DNA of 9,212 nt, taken from positions 1 to 9,212 of IMG/VR virus record IMGVR_UViG_3300005859_000239; one strand, written 5' to 3'. Position numbers and translations under genes: made by a program. The notes below the pieces were generated by a model. The model was not told the origin of the DNA and did no database searches. It saw only the letters and a list, made by a program, of their open reading frames with translations. Within the stretch, counting starts at the first letter, position 1. Each line of letters begins with the position of its first letter. This document shows, piece by piece, positions 11 through 6,589 of this stretch.

Positions 11-376
11 TTAGCTGTCAATTCTGTATTCAAATTTGACTTTACTTTTTTCTCTGACATCTTGACCTAATTTATAAATTATGACATTTTTATATTTTTT
101 ATAATGAACAATAACTAACGGTTGACAATTGCAAAAATTAAAAATTTCACAAAATCGAAACAGTTTTTCGATTTGAAATTTATCAACATAAACATGGTCT
201 GCAGATGTTGATTTTACTTCAATTGGGAAAATTATGCCATTTTTTGTAGCTATGATATCTGGAATTGCTTGTTTTCCAGTTCCGGAAACCGGAATTCTAA
301 TAGCTTTATAGCCATGTTTTTCTAATAATTCTACAGTTTTATATTCATAATATTTTCCAGATTGTCTAATATTCAT
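11..376 (-). CDS. hjc: Holliday junction resolvase, archaeal Hjc family (rudiviral, SIRV2 ORF121-like), 121 aa
   Basis: PD-(D/E)xK motifs GKYYE...RIPVSG...PDIIA...IEVKS. The ATG at 376 is preferred to the TTG at 379 and lies 21 nt after a TATA-GTC element. Confidence 0.95.
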   Translation of the reverse strand: MNIRQSGKYYEYKTVELLEKHGYKAIRIPVSGTGKQAIPDIIATKNGIIFPIEVKSTSADHVYVDKFQIEKLFRFCEIFNFCNCQPLVIVHYKKYKNVIIYKLGQDVREKSKVKFEYRIDS

Positions 377-379
377 CAA

Positions 380-448
380 ATAAAAATCAAAAATTATGAC
401 ATATATATGTTTAAATTTGTCAGATCATAAATTCTTAAATCGATATTC
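380..448. promoter_or_regulatory. Divergent promoter region for hjc and the methyltransferase, with two TATA-GTC elements
   Basis: Minus strand TATATATGTC (GAC at 398-400); plus strand TTTAAATTTGTC (GTC at 419-421). Confidence 0.65.
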
Positions 449-1969
449 ATGGAAAGATTGTTAGATAATTTAGAACATTATATTCCGAAAATAGAGAAAC
501 TAATATTAGAAAAAGAAAAAGGAGGAAGAAAAAGAGAAATAAGCTTACATAGATGGTGGTCCAAAAGATTTATTTATTTATATAGAAGTATTCTCTCATC
601 TTTTCTATTAAATGAAGATAATAAATTTTTTGAAGCTGTTGAAAATCCAGAATTGTTAGATGCAGATAAACAAATTTATTTAGAACCGATGGCCGGAGGC
701 GGAACTGGTATCGTTGAAGCTTCGTTATATAATTTTATTGCTTACGGCATAGATATTAATCCATTAGCAGTAAGAATAATTCATGGTTATTCAGTATTAC
801 GCAATAATGTTGATTTTAACAAAATAATATCTGTAGTTGAAGAAGTAAAAAATGAATTAAGTCAGATTTGGACCTATAAAGGACAAGAAATTTCTTATTT
901 CTTCATTACAAGAGAAAAAGTTCCATCTTGGATAATGTCGCATGGAAGGAAGAAGATAATTCTTTGTCCGAATTGCGGAAGAACATTTTGTACAAAGAAT
1001 TCAGATAAAGTTGAATGTCCTTATTGTAATTACGATATACAAATTACTATAAAACCTATTTATGAACCAAAAAATTTTGTTACTTATTCAAATTGGAAAG
1101 TTTTCGGATTTATTGTAAATAAAAAATTTATGTTTGACAGGGATTGGTTAATTGAAAGAAACAAATTAATGAATATAAATTTACATATTGATATAGATGT
1201 TAATATAAAAGAATTAAAAGAAGGCAAAAGATTATTACAAATTGGAATTTCTGAACCTGAACAATTATTTACAAAAGCTCAATTGCTTACTTTTCAAAAA
1301 ATTGCTGAAAAATCTAAAAAACTTGGAGAAGATGAGAGATTGCTTTTAATGTTAGCCGTCAGTGATTCTGTGAAAACCTGCAGTGTTCTGTCAAAATGGT
1401 ATCCGTTACAAAATGAACCAGTAATCTATGGTGGAGGAGTTAAAGGATTTTGGGTACCTGAATATACTGTGGAAACAAATCCATTAGCTCTACATGCCAG
1501 AAGTACAATATTTTCTAACATTAAAAATCAGCAACTTATAAAGAAATTTAATTTCAGAGGAGAAATAAATGTGATTCAAGGAGATGCTTTAACTATAAAT
1601 TATCCAAAAAGCGATTTAATAGTTTTAGATCCTCCATATTACAAAATTGCCCCAAGTTATGCTTCTTTAAGTTTTCCTCATATTGTGATAGCTAATTTGT
1701 TTGAAAAAATATCACTAAGAGAATCATTAAACAAAGAGATTAATAATACTGACTATTTTGAAAAAATTCTTAAAATTTTAATTAAAAGCAAACAAGCATT
1801 AAAAGATAATGGAAGAATTGTATTAATGATTAATACGAATATATCTAATGAAATTATAGAAAAATCTGGACTTGACATTATAAATAGATATGAAATACTA
1901 GGCGAATCACCTGGTAAACTAGGTAGATCCGAAAATAGAAAAATTAATCTTATTATTTTAGGGAAATAG
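449..1969 (+). CDS. DNA amino-methyltransferase (probably N6-adenine) with Zn-ribbon, DUF1156/COG1743-like, 506 aa
   Basis: N-terminal LHRWWSKR (DUF1156-type LHxWWxRR). SAM-binding motif LEPMAGGGT...GIDINP, Zn ribbon CPNC...CPYC, LFTKAQLL and ETNP segments, and catalytic DPPY near the C-terminus (motif I before motif IV). Confidence 0.88.
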   Translation: MERLLDNLEHYIPKIEKLILEKEKGGRKREISLHRWWSKRFIYLYRSILSSFLLNEDNKFFEAVENPELLDADKQIYLEPMAGGGTGIVEASLYNFIAYGIDINPLAVRIIHGYSVLRNNVDFNKIISVVEEVKNELSQIWTYKGQEISYFFITREKVPSWIMSHGRKKIILCPNCGRTFCTKNSDKVECPYCNYDIQITIKPIYEPKNFVTYSNWKVFGFIVNKKFMFDRDWLIERNKLMNINLHIDIDVNIKELKEGKRLLQIGISEPEQLFTKAQLLTFQKIAEKSKKLGEDERLLLMLAVSDSVKTCSVLSKWYPLQNEPVIYGGGVKGFWVPEYTVETNPLALHARSTIFSNIKNQQLIKKFNFRGEINVIQGDALTINYPKSDLIVLDPPYYKIAPSYASLSFPHIVIANLFEKISLRESLNKEINNTDYFEKILKILIKSKQALKDNGRIVLMINTNISNEIIEKSGLDIINRYEILGESPGKLGRSENRKINLIILGK

Positions 1970-2092
1970 ATTTTTTACAATTCTTATTATAGAAAAAGAT
2001 TATATAAGCTAAATCATTTAAATATTTTTTATTTTGAACTTGCACTCACAACAACTAAAAATATAATTGTCAGTCAGAAATAACTTAAATTC

Positions 2093-2374
2093 ATGAACCC
2101 AGAACTTGAAAGAATTATAGAAATTGTTGCAGAAGAGACAAAATTGAATAAAAAAGAAGTTGAGGAATTAAAAAAAGAAGTTAGCTATCTTGAAAATGCA
2201 ATTCTTGATGTATTTAATAGCTATCCAGATGGAAAAATTGATAAAGCTTCTGCTCTAGTATATCTTGCTTACTTGCTCGGTCAGGTAATTGAAGAGGATT
2301 ATGAATTTTCATTCTTCTTAGCAATTGTAAAAGCAGTTTATGATAGCAAAAAGACGGCAAAATTGAAAAAGTGA
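2093..2374 (+). CDS. Hypothetical small helical protein, 93 aa
   Basis: Clean ORF with its own TATA-GTC element (ATATAATTGTC, GTC at 2069-2071, 21 nt before the ATG). Confidence 0.8.
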   Translation: MNPELERIIEIVAEETKLNKKEVEELKKEVSYLENAILDVFNSYPDGKIDKASALVYLAYLLGQVIEEDYEFSFFLAIVKAVYDSKKTAKLKK

Positions 2375-2470: not shown

Positions 2471-2926
2471 TTATTCATTCAGAGCTTTTACAAATACCGG
2501 AGTATGCGTTCTTGAAGTTTCCCCGACAAACTTGAATCCGGCTTTCTTGTAAAGGGCGTTTGAATGATCATCAAATCCTAAAGTCCATAAATATTCAAAT
2601 CCATCTTTTCTTAGTTTTTCACTAAGGTCTTCTAGAAAACGGACAAGATAGTCTCCTGGTGCAGTTTTTGTAATCCTACGAATGAAGTAAGTCCTATCAT
2701 TCGGGATATTAAAATGAGAAGCGATAAAATGGAATGGCGTATTATCGTGGAGCCACGCAACTGCGGTAATGAAACCGTCACACATGTACATGAAGTAACG
2801 CGAATTTTTCCCCGCTCCACCGCCGATTGGCAAGCCTTGGGCGTGATAATACCTTATGAGCATTCTTACTAAATCTTTTTCAAAATCATTTTCAATTTCC
2901 TTAACTTCACAAATCATAGTTGTCAT
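2471..2926 (-). CDS. Putative GNAT-family acetyltransferase (rudiviral core, SIRV2 ORF154-like)
   Basis: C-terminal N-ALYKKAGF-x-VG GNAT motif. YYHAQGLPIGGGAGKNSRYF and AVAWLHDNTPF match the rudiviral family as I recall it. Confidence 0.85.
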   Translation of the reverse strand: MTTMICEVKEIENDFEKDLVRMLIRYYHAQGLPIGGGAGKNSRYFMYMCDGFITAVAWLHDNTPFHFIASHFNIPNDRTYFIRRITKTAPGDYLVRFLEDLSEKLRKDGFEYLWTLGFDDHSNALYKKAGFKFVGETSRTHTPVFVKALNE

Positions 2927-2976
2927 CTATTTTGTAAACGTATATCATTAATATTTTTAGATGAGTCAGAGAAACA

Positions 2977-2990
2977 GACTTTTAAATGTC
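2977..2990. promoter_or_regulatory. TATA box flanked by inverted GTC (GAC-TTTTAAAT-GTC), possible bidirectional promoter
   Basis: Reads TTTTAAATGTC on + (18 nt before ATG 3009) and ATTTAAAAGTC on - (towards the GNAT gene). Confidence 0.6.
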
Positions 2991-3008
2991 ATTCTAGATT
3001 TTCATTTT

Positions 3009-3311
3009 ATGAGTAAGCGAATAGCTATTTACATGAAAAGAGAGGAAAAGCAAATGTTGAAATTCTATGCTTCTCAATTAGGAATGTCAATTTCAGAATT
3101 TATAAGATTTTTAATTAAGGAGTTCTCAGCTGAAGATTTAAAATATTTTGAAACTAGATATAAACCAGATTTAGAGTTTTTAGTTACAGTTGATGAAGCA
3201 ATTCTAAAAAAGTTGGAAGATATGGAGATAAAATTACTAAGACCGCGGTCAACTATTGTGAGGGCTATGATATTGACTTTATCGCAAAATGTCGAGCAAA
3301 ACTCGACATGA
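3009..3311 (+). CDS. Tandem ribbon-helix-helix DNA-binding protein, 100 aa
   Basis: Two RHH units: KRIAIYM..EEKQML..YA..LGMSISEFIRFLI and FLVTVDEAILKKLE......PRSTIVRAMI. The start is moved from 2961 to ATG 3009 because the promoter element lies at 2980-2990. Confidence 0.85.
   Translation: MSKRIAIYMKREEKQMLKFYASQLGMSISEFIRFLIKEFSAEDLKYFETRYKPDLEFLVTVDEAILKKLEDMEIKLLRPRSTIVRAMILTLSQNVEQNST
3289..3309. repeat. Perfect 8-bp inverted repeat ATGTCGAG-CAAAA-CTCGACAT
   Basis: Read directly; it lies 36 nt upstream of the 466-aa gene. Confidence 0.75.
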
Positions 3312-3345
3312 TAGCTAATAAACTCTAGTTTGGGAATTTTATATT

Positions 3346-6006: not shown

Positions 6007-6060
6007 TGTTTTCGAATGTTTTATATTTGTCATATTACAAATTTTTATATAGATGAGATA

Positions 6061-6267
6061 ATGACAGATGAAACAAGATATATAAAAATTAAATTATTGT
6101 CTAAATGGTTAAATGATATATCTAAGGAAATTGTAAATAATAAAACTTTAGATGATGAAGATTTAATAGGCTTGTTAATGAGTATGAAAAATACAATTTC
6201 AGAACTTGACAAAGAAATAGAAATTATGATAGGCGAAATTACAAAAAATAAAAAAAGTCAAAAATAG
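6061..6267 (+). CDS. Hypothetical helical protein, 68 aa (probable paralogue of 7093..7275)
   Basis: The start is moved from 6016 to 6061 because TTTATATTTGTC (6020-6031) lies inside the extension. Confidence 0.75.
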   Translation: MTDETRYIKIKLLSKWLNDISKEIVNNKTLDDEDLIGLLMSMKNTISELDKEIEIMIGEITKNKKSQK

Positions 6268-6277
6268 GCGTATTAAA

Positions 6278-6589
6278 ATGGAAATTATAAAAGATTATGC
6301 GTTGGATGATTTAGATTTGATGATAATTTTAGCTATAGGAAAAAAGGGAAATTCAAGTAAAAAAATTCAAAAAACAGTTATAGAACTTTCAAAATTGCTA
6401 AACGTGAAAATTGATTGTATTGAAGATATTATTGAGAGATTGAATTCAATGTCAAGAATACCATTCTGGTTAAAGATAAATTATAAATATAGATTGAATG
6501 AATTAGGTAAAATAGCATATCATATGACAATAGAAAAATTGAAGGAAAAACAAAGGCAAGATATATTAAAAATATTAAACGAATTTTAG
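6278..6589 (+). CDS. Probable winged-helix protein, 103 aa
   Basis: LDDLDLMIILAIG...KKIQKTV...YRLNELGK pattern; 10 nt after the previous stop. Confidence 0.7.
   Translation: MEIIKDYALDDLDLMIILAIGKKGNSSKKIQKTVIELSKLLNVKIDCIEDIIERLNSMSRIPFWLKINYKYRLNELGKIAYHMTIEKLKEKQRQDILKILNEF

What the first reader, a model, noticed from the sequence alone, without database searches (positions are those of the whole stretch)
449..1969. Orphan, compact DUF1156/COG1743 Zn-ribbon DNA methyltransferase in a rudivirus core region
Seen: intact LHRWWSKR, EPMAGGGT, CxxC..CxxC and DPPY motifs, plus a rudivirus-type TTTAAATTTGTC promoter element. Known: this family is usually larger and cellular, and sits in DUF499/SNF2-helicase BREX-related defence loci; I do not recall it as a rudivirus core gene. 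Inference: a host defence methylase was captured, trimmed and put under viral control. It may pre-methylate viral DNA against Sulfolobales BREX-like or R-M immunity, or act as a decoy subunit. No partner ATPase or helicase gene is in the window.
Basis: partly seen in the sequence, partly recalled or inferred. Interest (0 to 1): 0.8.

Follow-up and report, generated by a model that had tools for sequence, protein, structure and literature searches.

The report
Rudivirus methyltransferase captured from host defence
A hot-spring archaeal virus carries a stand-alone DNA-methyltransferase gene copied from a host helicase–nuclease immunity module and wired to a viral promoter, most likely to disguise its own DNA; the trick is familiar, but the host module appears undescribed.

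Summary
Window 449-1969 (+) is an intact 506-aa ORF with the HRWWS, GGGT, 4-Cys Zn-ribbon and DPPY motifs, 28 nt downstream of a rudivirus-type TATA+GTC promoter. The window is a Usarudivirus-like contig.

The gene sits between Hjc and a 93-aa gene that are adjacent in SIRV9/SIRV10, and it is absent from all deposited phage and archaeal-virus records. Three other metagenomic rudivirus contigs carry it in the same slot.

It belongs to a rare, compact archaeal branch of the DUF1156 Zn-ribbon methyltransferases (hhalign E=3.8e-44), but the window protein itself passes no curated model threshold.

In 14 non-viral loci the homologue is always linked to an SF2 helicase, an HKD/PLD nuclease domain and usually an unknown ~450-aa protein. 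None has a DUF499 ATPase.

One such linked copy is 86% nucleotide-identical to a rudiviral copy, exactly from 5' leader to stop codon. Viral copies are under purifying selection (dN/dS 0.10-0.22).

"Captured and put under viral control" is therefore well supported. "Trimmed" is not, because Sulfolobales host copies are equally short, and "DUF499/SNF2 loci" is wrong for this branch.

The protective self-methylation function is inferred, not shown.

The parts
11..379 (-). Holliday-junction resolvase (Hjc), conserved rudiviral gene forming the left border of the insertion slot
   Evidence: PF01870 E=5e-20 and phrog_6591 E=9e-58. Collinear with SIRV9 at 81% nt identity.
407..448 (+). Rudiviral promoter cassette (TATA-like TTTAAATT plus GTC at 410-421) followed by a short spacer up to the ATG
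   Evidence: Exact 12-mer at 410-421. Homologous to the SIRV9 ORF38 promoter. The GTC element is described for SIRV1/2. Replaces the GGTG-box plus TTG start seen in the system-linked copies and in L013.
449..1969 (+). 506-aa compact DUF1156-like Zn-ribbon SAM-dependent DNA (probably N6-adenine) methyltransferase, solitary in the virus
   Evidence: AF2 model pLDDT 89.4, pTM 0.90. Best full-length fold matches are DNA methyltransferases. dN/dS 0.10-0.22.
545..568 (+). LHRWWSKR motif in the N-terminal helical (DUF1156-like) domain, residues 33-40
   Evidence: H34, R35, W36, W37 and S38 are nearly invariant. Aligns with IHRWWARRP of canonical DUF1156 proteins.
683..706 (+). Motif I / SAM-binding loop EPMAGGGT, residues 79-86, after core strand 1
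   Evidence: P80, G83, G84, G85 and T86 are invariant. Strand 76-79 followed by helix 86-93 in the model.
803..1558 (+). ~250-residue insert (residues 119-370) splitting the Rossmann core after strand 2; presumed target-recognition domain
   Evidence: Secondary structure of the model. Same topology as described for BR and type-3 BREX methyltransferases. It is the fastest-evolving region.
965..1027 (+). 4-Cys Zn ribbon (C173, C176, C190, C193) inside the insert
   Evidence: The four Cys are invariant in 28 sequences. Weak Zn-ribbon Pfam hits. Residues around the Cys are only 33-56% conserved with more distant copies.
1628..1639 (+). Motif IV DPPY (catalytic), residues 394-397
   Evidence: Invariant in all 28 sequences. 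It follows strand 388-393 in the model.
1971..1976 (+). T6 run directly after the stop codon; plausible archaeal oligo-T terminator (inference)
   Evidence: Read from the sequence. Not tested.
2061..2092 (+). Degenerate second copy of the promoter cassette (ATATAATTGTC, about 21 nt, then ATG) now serving the displaced 93-aa gene
   Evidence: Alignment A1. In L002 the two copies form a 77-nt direct repeat bracketing the gene, and L013 has a 46-nt equivalent.
2093..2374 (+). 93-aa conserved Usarudivirus gene (phrog_12149); right border of the slot
   Evidence: phrog_12149 E=3e-16. 38% identity over full length to SIRV9 ORF38, E=7e-21. It abuts Hjc in SIRV9 and SIRV10.

Best explanation
The ORF encodes an active SAM-dependent DNA amino-methyltransferase, most likely N6-adenine. 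It is a minimal DUF1156-type enzyme: an N-terminal helical domain with HRWWS, then a Rossmann core split after strand 2 by a ~250-residue recognition insert that carries one 4-Cys Zn ribbon, and no C-terminal HTH extension. In hyperthermophilic archaea this enzyme is the modification subunit of a conserved R-M-like module made of the methyltransferase, an SF2 DEAD helicase, an HKD/PLD nuclease and an unknown ~450-aa protein. A Usarudivirus-like lineage copied only the methyltransferase, from its 5' leader to its stop codon. It landed between Hjc and the 93-aa gene. It first kept its own GGTG box and TTG start (the L013 state). Later it was fused to a duplicated rudiviral TATA+GTC promoter with an ATG start (window, L002, L015). 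When expressed in infected cells it would methylate replicating viral DNA at the host module's recognition sites, so that the helicase-nuclease treats the virus as self. Shown: gene integrity, motifs, fold, family placement, insertion site, partner linkage in cells, near-identical linked copy, purifying selection. Inferred: DNA as substrate, target base, defence role of the module, and the protective effect.
For: The gene is intact, with invariant catalytic and SAM motifs. The model is confident and its best full-length fold hits are all DNA methyltransferases (Dam and Mcbe1). hhalign to canonical DUF1156+N6_N4 methyltransferases gives E=3.8e-44. PADLOC hits are MTase_II 5e-19, plus PglXI and HmaB. 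The empty site is seen in SIRV9 and SIRV10. The same slot is filled in L002, L013 and L015. In 13 cellular loci plus L028 the homologue is next to a homologous helicase, with the HKD protein and the unknown partner present wherever the contig extends; none of the 5 viral loci has them. The clade holding the rudiviral copies (97/99; it also holds the system-linked L028 copy) nests among the other system-linked Sulfolobales copies, with moderate support (83/85) for that nesting. L028 (system-linked) and L013 (rudiviral) share 86% nt identity, bounded at -20 nt and the stop codon. The promoter was swapped and duplicated. dN/dS is 0.10-0.22 over dS 0.4-1.9. Virus-encoded methyltransferases are an accepted anti-R-M strategy in archaeal viruses (PMC13465236).
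Against: There are no methylation data. Neither the module nor this enzyme branch has been tested experimentally. The host of this virus is unknown, and no system-bearing genome was shown in the same sample; the genome scan did not return the S. islandicus hosts of isolated SIRVs. The window protein fails all curated thresholds: N6_N4_Mtase 21.4 bits versus 26.7, no PF06634 hit, NF042963 15.6 bits versus 1000. The Zn-ribbon region is only 56% identical between the window and the linked copy L028, so specificity may have drifted. UPF0020/Trm11-type RNA methyltransferase models also hit the motif I region. Only 9.2 kb of a genome of about 35 kb is visible. The AU test for keeping all linked copies together gives p=0.07, so it is not formally rejected.
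Confidence: 0.6

Rival explanations
1. Decoy or inhibitor: the viral protein acts mainly by binding the host helicase-nuclease or the unknown partner and poisoning the complex, not by methylating DNA.
For: It is a homologue (74-83% aa identity) of a subunit of a multi-protein module. Subunit mimicry is a known anti-defence logic (own knowledge).
Against: GGGT, DPPY and the four Zn-ribbon Cys are invariant in all viral copies. Purifying selection acts across the whole length, with core regions 74-90% conserved. A pure decoy would be free to lose catalysis.
Confidence: 0.1
2. Viral housekeeping or host takeover methylation: the enzyme marks viral or host DNA for replication, transcription timing, packaging, or discrimination of viral from host DNA, with no link to immunity.
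For: The gene lies in the central conserved block next to Hjc and behind a promoter type shared with ordinary viral genes. Orphan methyltransferases with regulatory roles exist (own knowledge).
Against: It is absent from all 23 deposited SIRV genomes, so it is dispensable for the rudiviral cycle. Its closest relatives are the modification genes of helicase-nuclease modules.
Confidence: 0.12
3. RNA (for example tRNA or rRNA m2G/m6A) or protein amino-methyltransferase rather than a DNA enzyme.
For: PF01170 (UPF0020) hits 15 of 28 members. The best PDB sequence hits are Trm11-type tRNA methyltransferases and Nop10-like or RpoP-like Zn ribbons. DPPY also occurs in RNA m2G enzymes (own knowledge).
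Against: Those hits cover only ~40 residues around motif I or the Zn ribbon. The end-to-end homology is to DUF1156+N6_N4 DNA methyltransferases. All full-length fold hits are DNA methyltransferases. The obligatory partners are a helicase and an HKD nuclease.
Confidence: 0.07
4. The transfer went from virus to host: the linked copy in L028 acquired a viral methyltransferase, and the viral gene is the older resident.
For: P0007 and P0008 fall inside the clade that holds the rudiviral copies, at an unresolved fork. Keeping all linked copies together costs 31 lnL units, but p=0.07.
Against: The methyltransferase-helicase-HKD linkage spans Sulfolobales, Desulfurococcaceae, Thermococcus, Methanocaldococcus and Bathyarchaeia, whereas viral copies form one narrow group. 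The least-modified viral copy (L013) still has the cellular-type GGTG box and TTG start. Deposited rudiviruses show the empty site.
Confidence: 0.08

Closest known systems
HmaB / BR-system DUF1156 N6-adenine methyltransferases (Hma, i.e. DUF499-centred BREX-related systems; bioRxiv 10.1101/2025.10.09.681413; PADLOC HmaB)
   Same: N-terminal helical domain with the HRWW(A/S)RR motif. Rossmann core with GGGT and DPPY. Recognition insert after core strand 2 with a 4-Cys Zn finger. Homology at E=3.8e-44 over 537 columns. Partnered in cells with a helicase-nuclease effector.
   Different: About 510 aa instead of about 720-1000 aa. It lacks the C-terminal HTH triad and the extra Zn fingers. No DUF499 ATPase in any of 14 loci. 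The helicase is DEAD/Cas3/DpdJ-like rather than Swi2/Snf2, and the HKD domain is C-terminal. It is far below the NF042963 cutoff.
PglXI, the type-3 BREX methyltransferase
   Same: Nested recognition insert in the methyltransferase core. Weak PADLOC hit of 7.8e-08 over residues 172-399. The preprint states that the BR and type-3 BREX methyltransferase cores are equivalent.
   Different: No PglZ, BrxC or other BREX genes nearby. Much shorter, with a different N-terminus.
Orphan DNA methyltransferases of phages and archaeal viruses (anti-restriction by self-methylation)
   Same: A solitary methyltransferase on a virus, derived from a host modification gene and expressed from a viral promoter. The strategy is reported for 295 archaeal viral genomes (PMC13465236).
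   Different: Different protein family. First case found here in Rudiviridae. The donor is a helicase-HKD module rather than a classical type I/II R-M system. The function is not yet tested.
DISARM and type III R-M systems (comparison for the cellular donor module)
   Same: A separate methyltransferase combined with an SF2 helicase and a nuclease (PLD in DISARM). Weak DrmA-like helicase hits.
   Different: No DUF1998 (DrmB) and no DrmD/DrmE. No PADLOC DISARM assignment. Different methyltransferase family. Type III Res carries a PD-(D/E)XK nuclease, not HKD (own knowledge).
Rudiviral core SAM-dependent methyltransferase (SIRV2 gp41, ORF158a)
   Same: Annotated as a SAM-dependent methyltransferase in a rudivirus.
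   Different: 158 aa, a different genome position, and no significant similarity (E=0.018; no tblastn hit).

Membership tests
DUF1156 / COG1743 Zn-ribbon DNA methyltransferases (superfamily level) | End-to-end homology to proteins carrying PF06634 plus PF01555 | tested here: met
   hhalign of A2 against A5 (P0029-P0032): probability 100%, E=3.8e-44, 537 aligned columns. 11 of 28 family members hit PF06634, best E=8.6e-06.
DUF1156 / COG1743 Zn-ribbon DNA methyltransferases (superfamily level) | The window protein itself matches Pfam PF06634 at its curated threshold | tested here: not met
   No PF06634 hit at E<=0.01 for the window protein.
DUF1156 / COG1743 Zn-ribbon DNA methyltransferases (superfamily level) | SAM-binding motif I and catalytic (D/N)PPY, with a Zn finger in an insert after core strand 2 | tested here: met
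   GGGT, DPPY and the four Cys are invariant. The topology is seen in the AF2 model, pLDDT 89.4.
BR / Hma-type methyltransferase (HmaB; NCBIfam NF042963 DUF1156_antiphage) | Score above the NF042963 equivalog cutoff | tested here: not met
   15.6 bits against a cutoff of 1000. PADLOC HmaB gives only 2.5e-07 over ~110 residues.
BR / Hma-type methyltransferase (HmaB; NCBIfam NF042963 DUF1156_antiphage) | [quoted passage not shown] | tested here: not met
   The protein ends at residue 506, directly after the last core strand. The alignment stops at column 634 of 856 of the canonical proteins.
BR / Hma-type methyltransferase (HmaB; NCBIfam NF042963 DUF1156_antiphage) | Genomic linkage to a DUF499 AAA+ ATPase and a Swi2/Snf2-type helicase | tested here: not met
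   No DUF499 in any of 14 linked loci. The partners are a DEAD-type helicase, an HKD protein and an unknown ~450-aa protein. No partner of any kind is present in the viral loci.
Pfam PF01555 N6_N4_Mtase | Score at or above the gathering threshold | tested here: inconclusive
   The window protein scores 21.4 bits against 26.7. 21 of 28 family members hit at E<=0.01, best 4.4e-09.
Virus-encoded orphan (anti-restriction) DNA methyltransferase | Located on a viral genome without a cognate nuclease | tested here: met
   The window is collinear with SIRV9 over 9.2 kb. No helicase, HKD or unknown partner is found in the window, L002, L013, L014 or L015. Caveat: only 9.2 kb of the genome is visible.
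Virus-encoded orphan (anti-restriction) DNA methyltransferase | Methylates viral DNA and thereby relieves restriction | not testable with these tools
   This needs methylome sequencing and plating assays.
DISARM (for the cellular donor module) | DrmA helicase plus DrmB (DUF1998) plus DrmC (PLD) core | tested here: not met
   Only generic SF2 similarity to DrmA. No DUF1998. PADLOC gives no match for the HKD protein or the unknown partner beyond noise.

The most novel reading that the evidence does not exclude
The viral gene is a natural pointer to an undescribed immune system of hyperthermophilic archaea. The system has four components and no DUF499: a compact DUF1156-like methyltransferase, a DEAD helicase, an HKD nuclease and a novel ~450-aa protein. 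The rudiviral copy would then be the first counter-defence against a BREX-related or Hma-like system found in an archaeal virus, caught at two stages of domestication: own leader and TTG start in L013, viral promoter and ATG start in the window.
Probability: 0.4. Interest if true: 0.7.

Novelty: new variant of a known kind. Interest (0 to 1): 0.5.

Why it matters
Defence systems of Sulfolobales other than CRISPR are poorly known, and few anti-defence genes of their viruses have been identified beyond anti-CRISPRs. This gene gives a concrete, testable pair. One side is a conserved methyltransferase / helicase / HKD / unknown module found from Sulfolobales to Thermococcus and Methanocaldococcus. 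The other is a viral copy of its modification subunit. The series L028, L013 and window also documents, at nucleotide resolution, how a rudivirus acquires a host gene and rewires it with a duplicated viral promoter. The slot next to Hjc appears to tolerate accessory genes. If the module restricts viruses, it widens the BREX-related/Hma group to a minimal form without the ATPase.

Tried and rejected
1. Direct Pfam and NCBIfam assignment of the window protein gave only sub-threshold hits. Family placement needed the 28-member scan and hhalign.

2. PDB sequence and fold searches found no close solved structure, only generic Rossmann matches of TM 0.15-0.27.

3. The structure of the unknown ~450-aa partner, predicted from 11 sequences, had pLDDT 51 and was unusable. 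I ran no fold search on it. It has no Pfam or PADLOC match and is unrelated to the rudiviral 466-aa protein.

4. I first labelled all nine 71-80% relatives as viral. This was wrong: L028 (P0008) is helicase-PLD-linked. Contexts for P0004, P0006 and P0007 remain unknown.

5. The IMG/VR and JGI metagenome scans with the single protein returned only the window itself and L002.

6. L014 and L025 have no nucleotide match in the phage collection, and L028 has no Rfam match.

7. The sigma-70 promoter scan is not applicable to archaea.

8. Enrichment of the exact 12-mer promoter at up to 2 mismatches was not significant.

9. DISARM, type III R-M and classical BR/Hma were considered for the donor module and rejected as memberships.
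Full report
**Observation.** Window 449-1969 (+) is an uninterrupted 506-codon ORF with an ATG start and a TAG stop.
- LHRWWSKR, residues 33-40
- EPMAGGGT, residues 79-86
- CPNC...CPYC, with C173/C176/C190/C193
- DPPY, residues 394-397

In an alignment of 28 full-length homologues, GGGT, the four cysteines and DPPY are invariant and HRWWS is nearly so. TTTAAATTTGTC lies at 410-421, with its GTC 30 nt before the ATG. As a loose 12-mer it is not enriched in the window (12 matches versus 8.4 expected). The cassette is nevertheless homologous to the promoter of SIRV9 ORF38. A TATA-like box followed by GTC precedes six leading genes of the window. A GTC downstream of the TATA box is a published feature of most SIRV1/2 promoters (PMC5569661, citing Kessler et al. 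2004).

**What the window is.** It is IMG/VR contig UViG_3300005859_000239. It is collinear, at about 80% nucleotide identity, with the Yellowstone Usarudiviruses SIRV4-11 and isolate V65. Its genes include Hjc, a conserved 466-aa protein and a glycosyltransferase, and in the V65 record the matched stretch lies between the minor and major capsid protein genes.

In SIRV9 and SIRV10, Hjc and a 93-aa gene are divergent neighbours separated by about 70 bp. The window's 93-aa gene is their homologue (38% identity, E=7e-21). In the window, a segment of about 1.6 kb carrying the methyltransferase sits between them. Window-SIRV9 homology runs unbroken from Hjc through the promoter to the start codon, window position 453.

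tblastn of the protein against 50,697 phage and archaeal-virus records finds nothing. The small SAM-dependent methyltransferase of SIRV2 (gp41) is unrelated. So this is an accessory gene, not a core gene.

**Family placement.**
- The window protein alone passes no curated threshold: N6_N4_Mtase 21.4 bits versus 26.7, no PF06634 hit, NF042963 15.6 bits versus 1000.
- Its best defence-library match is a type II methyltransferase model (5e-19 over residues 68-464), with weak PglXI and HmaB hits.
- Across the 28-member family, 21 hit N6_N4_Mtase, 15 hit UPF0020 and 11 hit DUF1156.
- A profile-profile comparison with canonical DUF1156+N6_N4 proteins of 722-882 aa gives probability 100% and E=3.8e-44 over 537 columns. 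The canonical proteins add extra Zn fingers and a C-terminal extension of about 220 residues.
- A search of 1.84 billion representative proteins finds 4731 relatives at E<=1e-3, but only about 16 representative clusters match the compact form end to end at E<1e-100. The Sulfolobales-plus-virus clade (about 510-540 aa) is the shortest.

**Structure.** The AlphaFold model is confident (pLDDT 89.4, pTM 0.90). It shows:
- an N-terminal helical domain;
- core strand 1, the GGGT loop and strand 2;
- an insert of about 250 residues with a beta-rich Zn ribbon and helices;
- the rest of the Rossmann core, beginning with the strand that ends in DPPY.

This is the topology described for BR and type-3 BREX methyltransferases (a recognition insert after strand 2 with a 4-Cys finger), minus their C-terminal HTH triad. 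No close solved structure exists. The best full-length matches among predicted viral structures are all site-specific DNA methyltransferases, both N4-cytosine and N6-adenine. DPPY favours N6-adenine (own knowledge), but the target base is not established.

**The cellular context defines a module.** I examined 13 distinct cellular loci:
- Stygiolobus caldivivus chromosome
- a Sulfolobales single-cell genome
- a Thermoprotei MAG
- Desulfurococcaceae and Infirmifilum MAGs
- Thermococcus sp. M36
- Methanocaldococcus
- metagenome contigs

In every locus the homologue lies next to a homologous DEAD/ResIII SF2 helicase. Wherever the contig continues, there is also a protein ending in a PLD/HKD domain and an unannotated protein of about 416-489 aa.

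In Sulfolobales the helicase and HKD proteins are fused into 1467-1726 aa. The N-terminal part is 30% identical (2e-71) to the free helicase. The C-terminal part matches the HKD protein at 1e-19. The HxK motif is kept in most copies. The unknown partner shares a (L/I)(L/I)PxPxS motif, has no family match, and could not be modelled (pLDDT 51).

No DUF499 ATPase is present and no PADLOC system model fits. None of the five viral loci has any partner.

**Capture.**
- In the maximum-likelihood tree, the nine sequences closest to the window form a clade (97/99). It is nested in the Sulfolobales group, sister to the Stygiolobus and L005 copies (83/85), with the ~610-aa proteins of other archaea as outgroup.
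- Four members of the clade are proven rudiviral and occupy the same slot: window, L002, L015 and L013.
- One member (L014) sits among tandem C2H2 zinc-finger genes typical of crenarchaeal viruses.
- One member (L028, P0008) is followed, with the same 17-nt convergent overlap as in L006, by a fragment 64% identical (1.6e-83) to the Stygiolobus helicase-HKD C-terminus. Its flanks have no rudiviral similarity. My first labelling of the whole clade as viral was therefore wrong.
- L028 is 83% identical in protein, and 86% in nucleotides, to the rudiviral L013 copy. The homology starts 20 nt upstream of the start codon and ends at the stop codon.
- A single rudiviral acquisition is compatible with the data (AU p=0.43). 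Forcing all linked copies together costs 31 log-likelihood units (p=0.07).
- Host-to-virus transfer is favoured for three reasons: the wide phyletic spread of the linked form, the empty site in deposited rudiviruses, and L013 retaining the cellular-type GGTG box and TTG start.

**Domestication.** In the window, L002 and L015 the cellular leader is replaced by the rudiviral cassette TGTTTAAATTTGTC, about 25 nt of spacer, and an ATG. In L002 a 77-nt direct repeat containing the promoter and first codons brackets the gene. L013 has a 46-nt equivalent. In the window the downstream copy has decayed to ATATAATTGTC. "Put under viral control" is therefore supported. "Trimmed" is not: host Sulfolobales copies are 516-537 aa versus 506-514 aa in viruses.

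**Selection.** Pairwise dN/dS among the viral copies is 0.10-0.22 at dS 0.4-1.9. The gene has therefore been kept functional for a long time. The residues around the Zn-ribbon cysteines change fastest, as expected of a specificity element.

**Mechanism and rivals.** The best-supported reading (confidence 0.6) is an active orphan DNA methyltransferase that modifies viral DNA at the sites recognised by the host methyltransferase/helicase/HKD module, so the virus escapes restriction. The rivals are:
- a decoy subunit (0.10), disfavoured by the invariant catalytic residues;
- a regulatory or takeover methylase (0.12), disfavoured by the gene's absence from all isolates;
- an RNA or protein methyltransferase (0.07), supported only by local motif-I similarity;
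- virus-to-host transfer (0.08).

DNA as substrate, the target base, the defence role of the module and the protective effect are all inferences.

**Comparison and novelty.** Virus-encoded methyltransferases as counter-defence are well known, including in archaeal viruses (PMC13465236). What is new:
- the family, a minimal DUF1156-type enzyme that fails two defining features of BR/Hma methyltransferases;
- its presence in Rudiviridae;
- the donor module, which I did not find in the literature I could search.

I rate it a new variant of a known kind, with interest 0.5.

Noticed in passing
window 2961-3311 (+): A 116-aa ORF with two ribbon-helix-helix (CopG/NikA-like) motifs. It lies in a segment (about 2880-3343) with no blastn counterpart in SIRV9, where the two flanking genes are only 135 bp apart. 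This looks like a second accessory insertion near the methyltransferase.
   Followed up: partly
window 6017-6063: A third copy of the promoter cassette (TGTTTTATATTTGTCATAT...; 88% identical to the SIRV9 ORF38 promoter) lies inside the listed ORF 6016-6267. The real start of that gene is probably the in-frame ATG at 6061.
   Followed up: partly
window 6009-6589: This segment matches SIRV9 (L001 6879-6287) in the opposite orientation, so there is a local inversion relative to SIRV9.
   Followed up: no
L014:1-3116: The most divergent member of the viral clade (P0009) sits next to three tandem C2H2 zinc-finger genes (phrog_9929) and a 72-aa fragment of a different DNA methyltransferase (phrog_18146). 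There is no nucleotide match to any deposited virus. It is probably another crenarchaeal virus that carries the gene.
   Followed up: partly
L025:1-4366: P0014 is close to the system-linked P0013 copy. It is followed by a PAPS-reductase-like gene, two RHH repressor genes and a phrog_28406 protein instead of the helicase. This may be another mobile, solitary copy.
   Followed up: partly
L028:1-130: The first ~130 nt of this otherwise AT-rich contig are 63-68% GC. They have no ORF and no Rfam match. The cause is unexplained; a chimeric assembly end or part of a structured RNA are possibilities.
   Followed up: partly
L004:11568-12068 (-): In this Sulfolobales locus the helicase fusion is shorter (1467 aa) and lacks the HxK motif. 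A separate 166-aa ORF lies between it and the methyltransferase and may be the split-off HKD domain.
   Followed up: no
L029 (SIRV2) 18836-19672: In SIRV2 the ORF154 homologue abuts Hjc directly. Usarudiviruses have the 93-aa gene there, and the window has the 93-aa gene plus the methyltransferase. The Hjc-proximal junction therefore looks like a recurrent site for accessory genes.
   Followed up: partly
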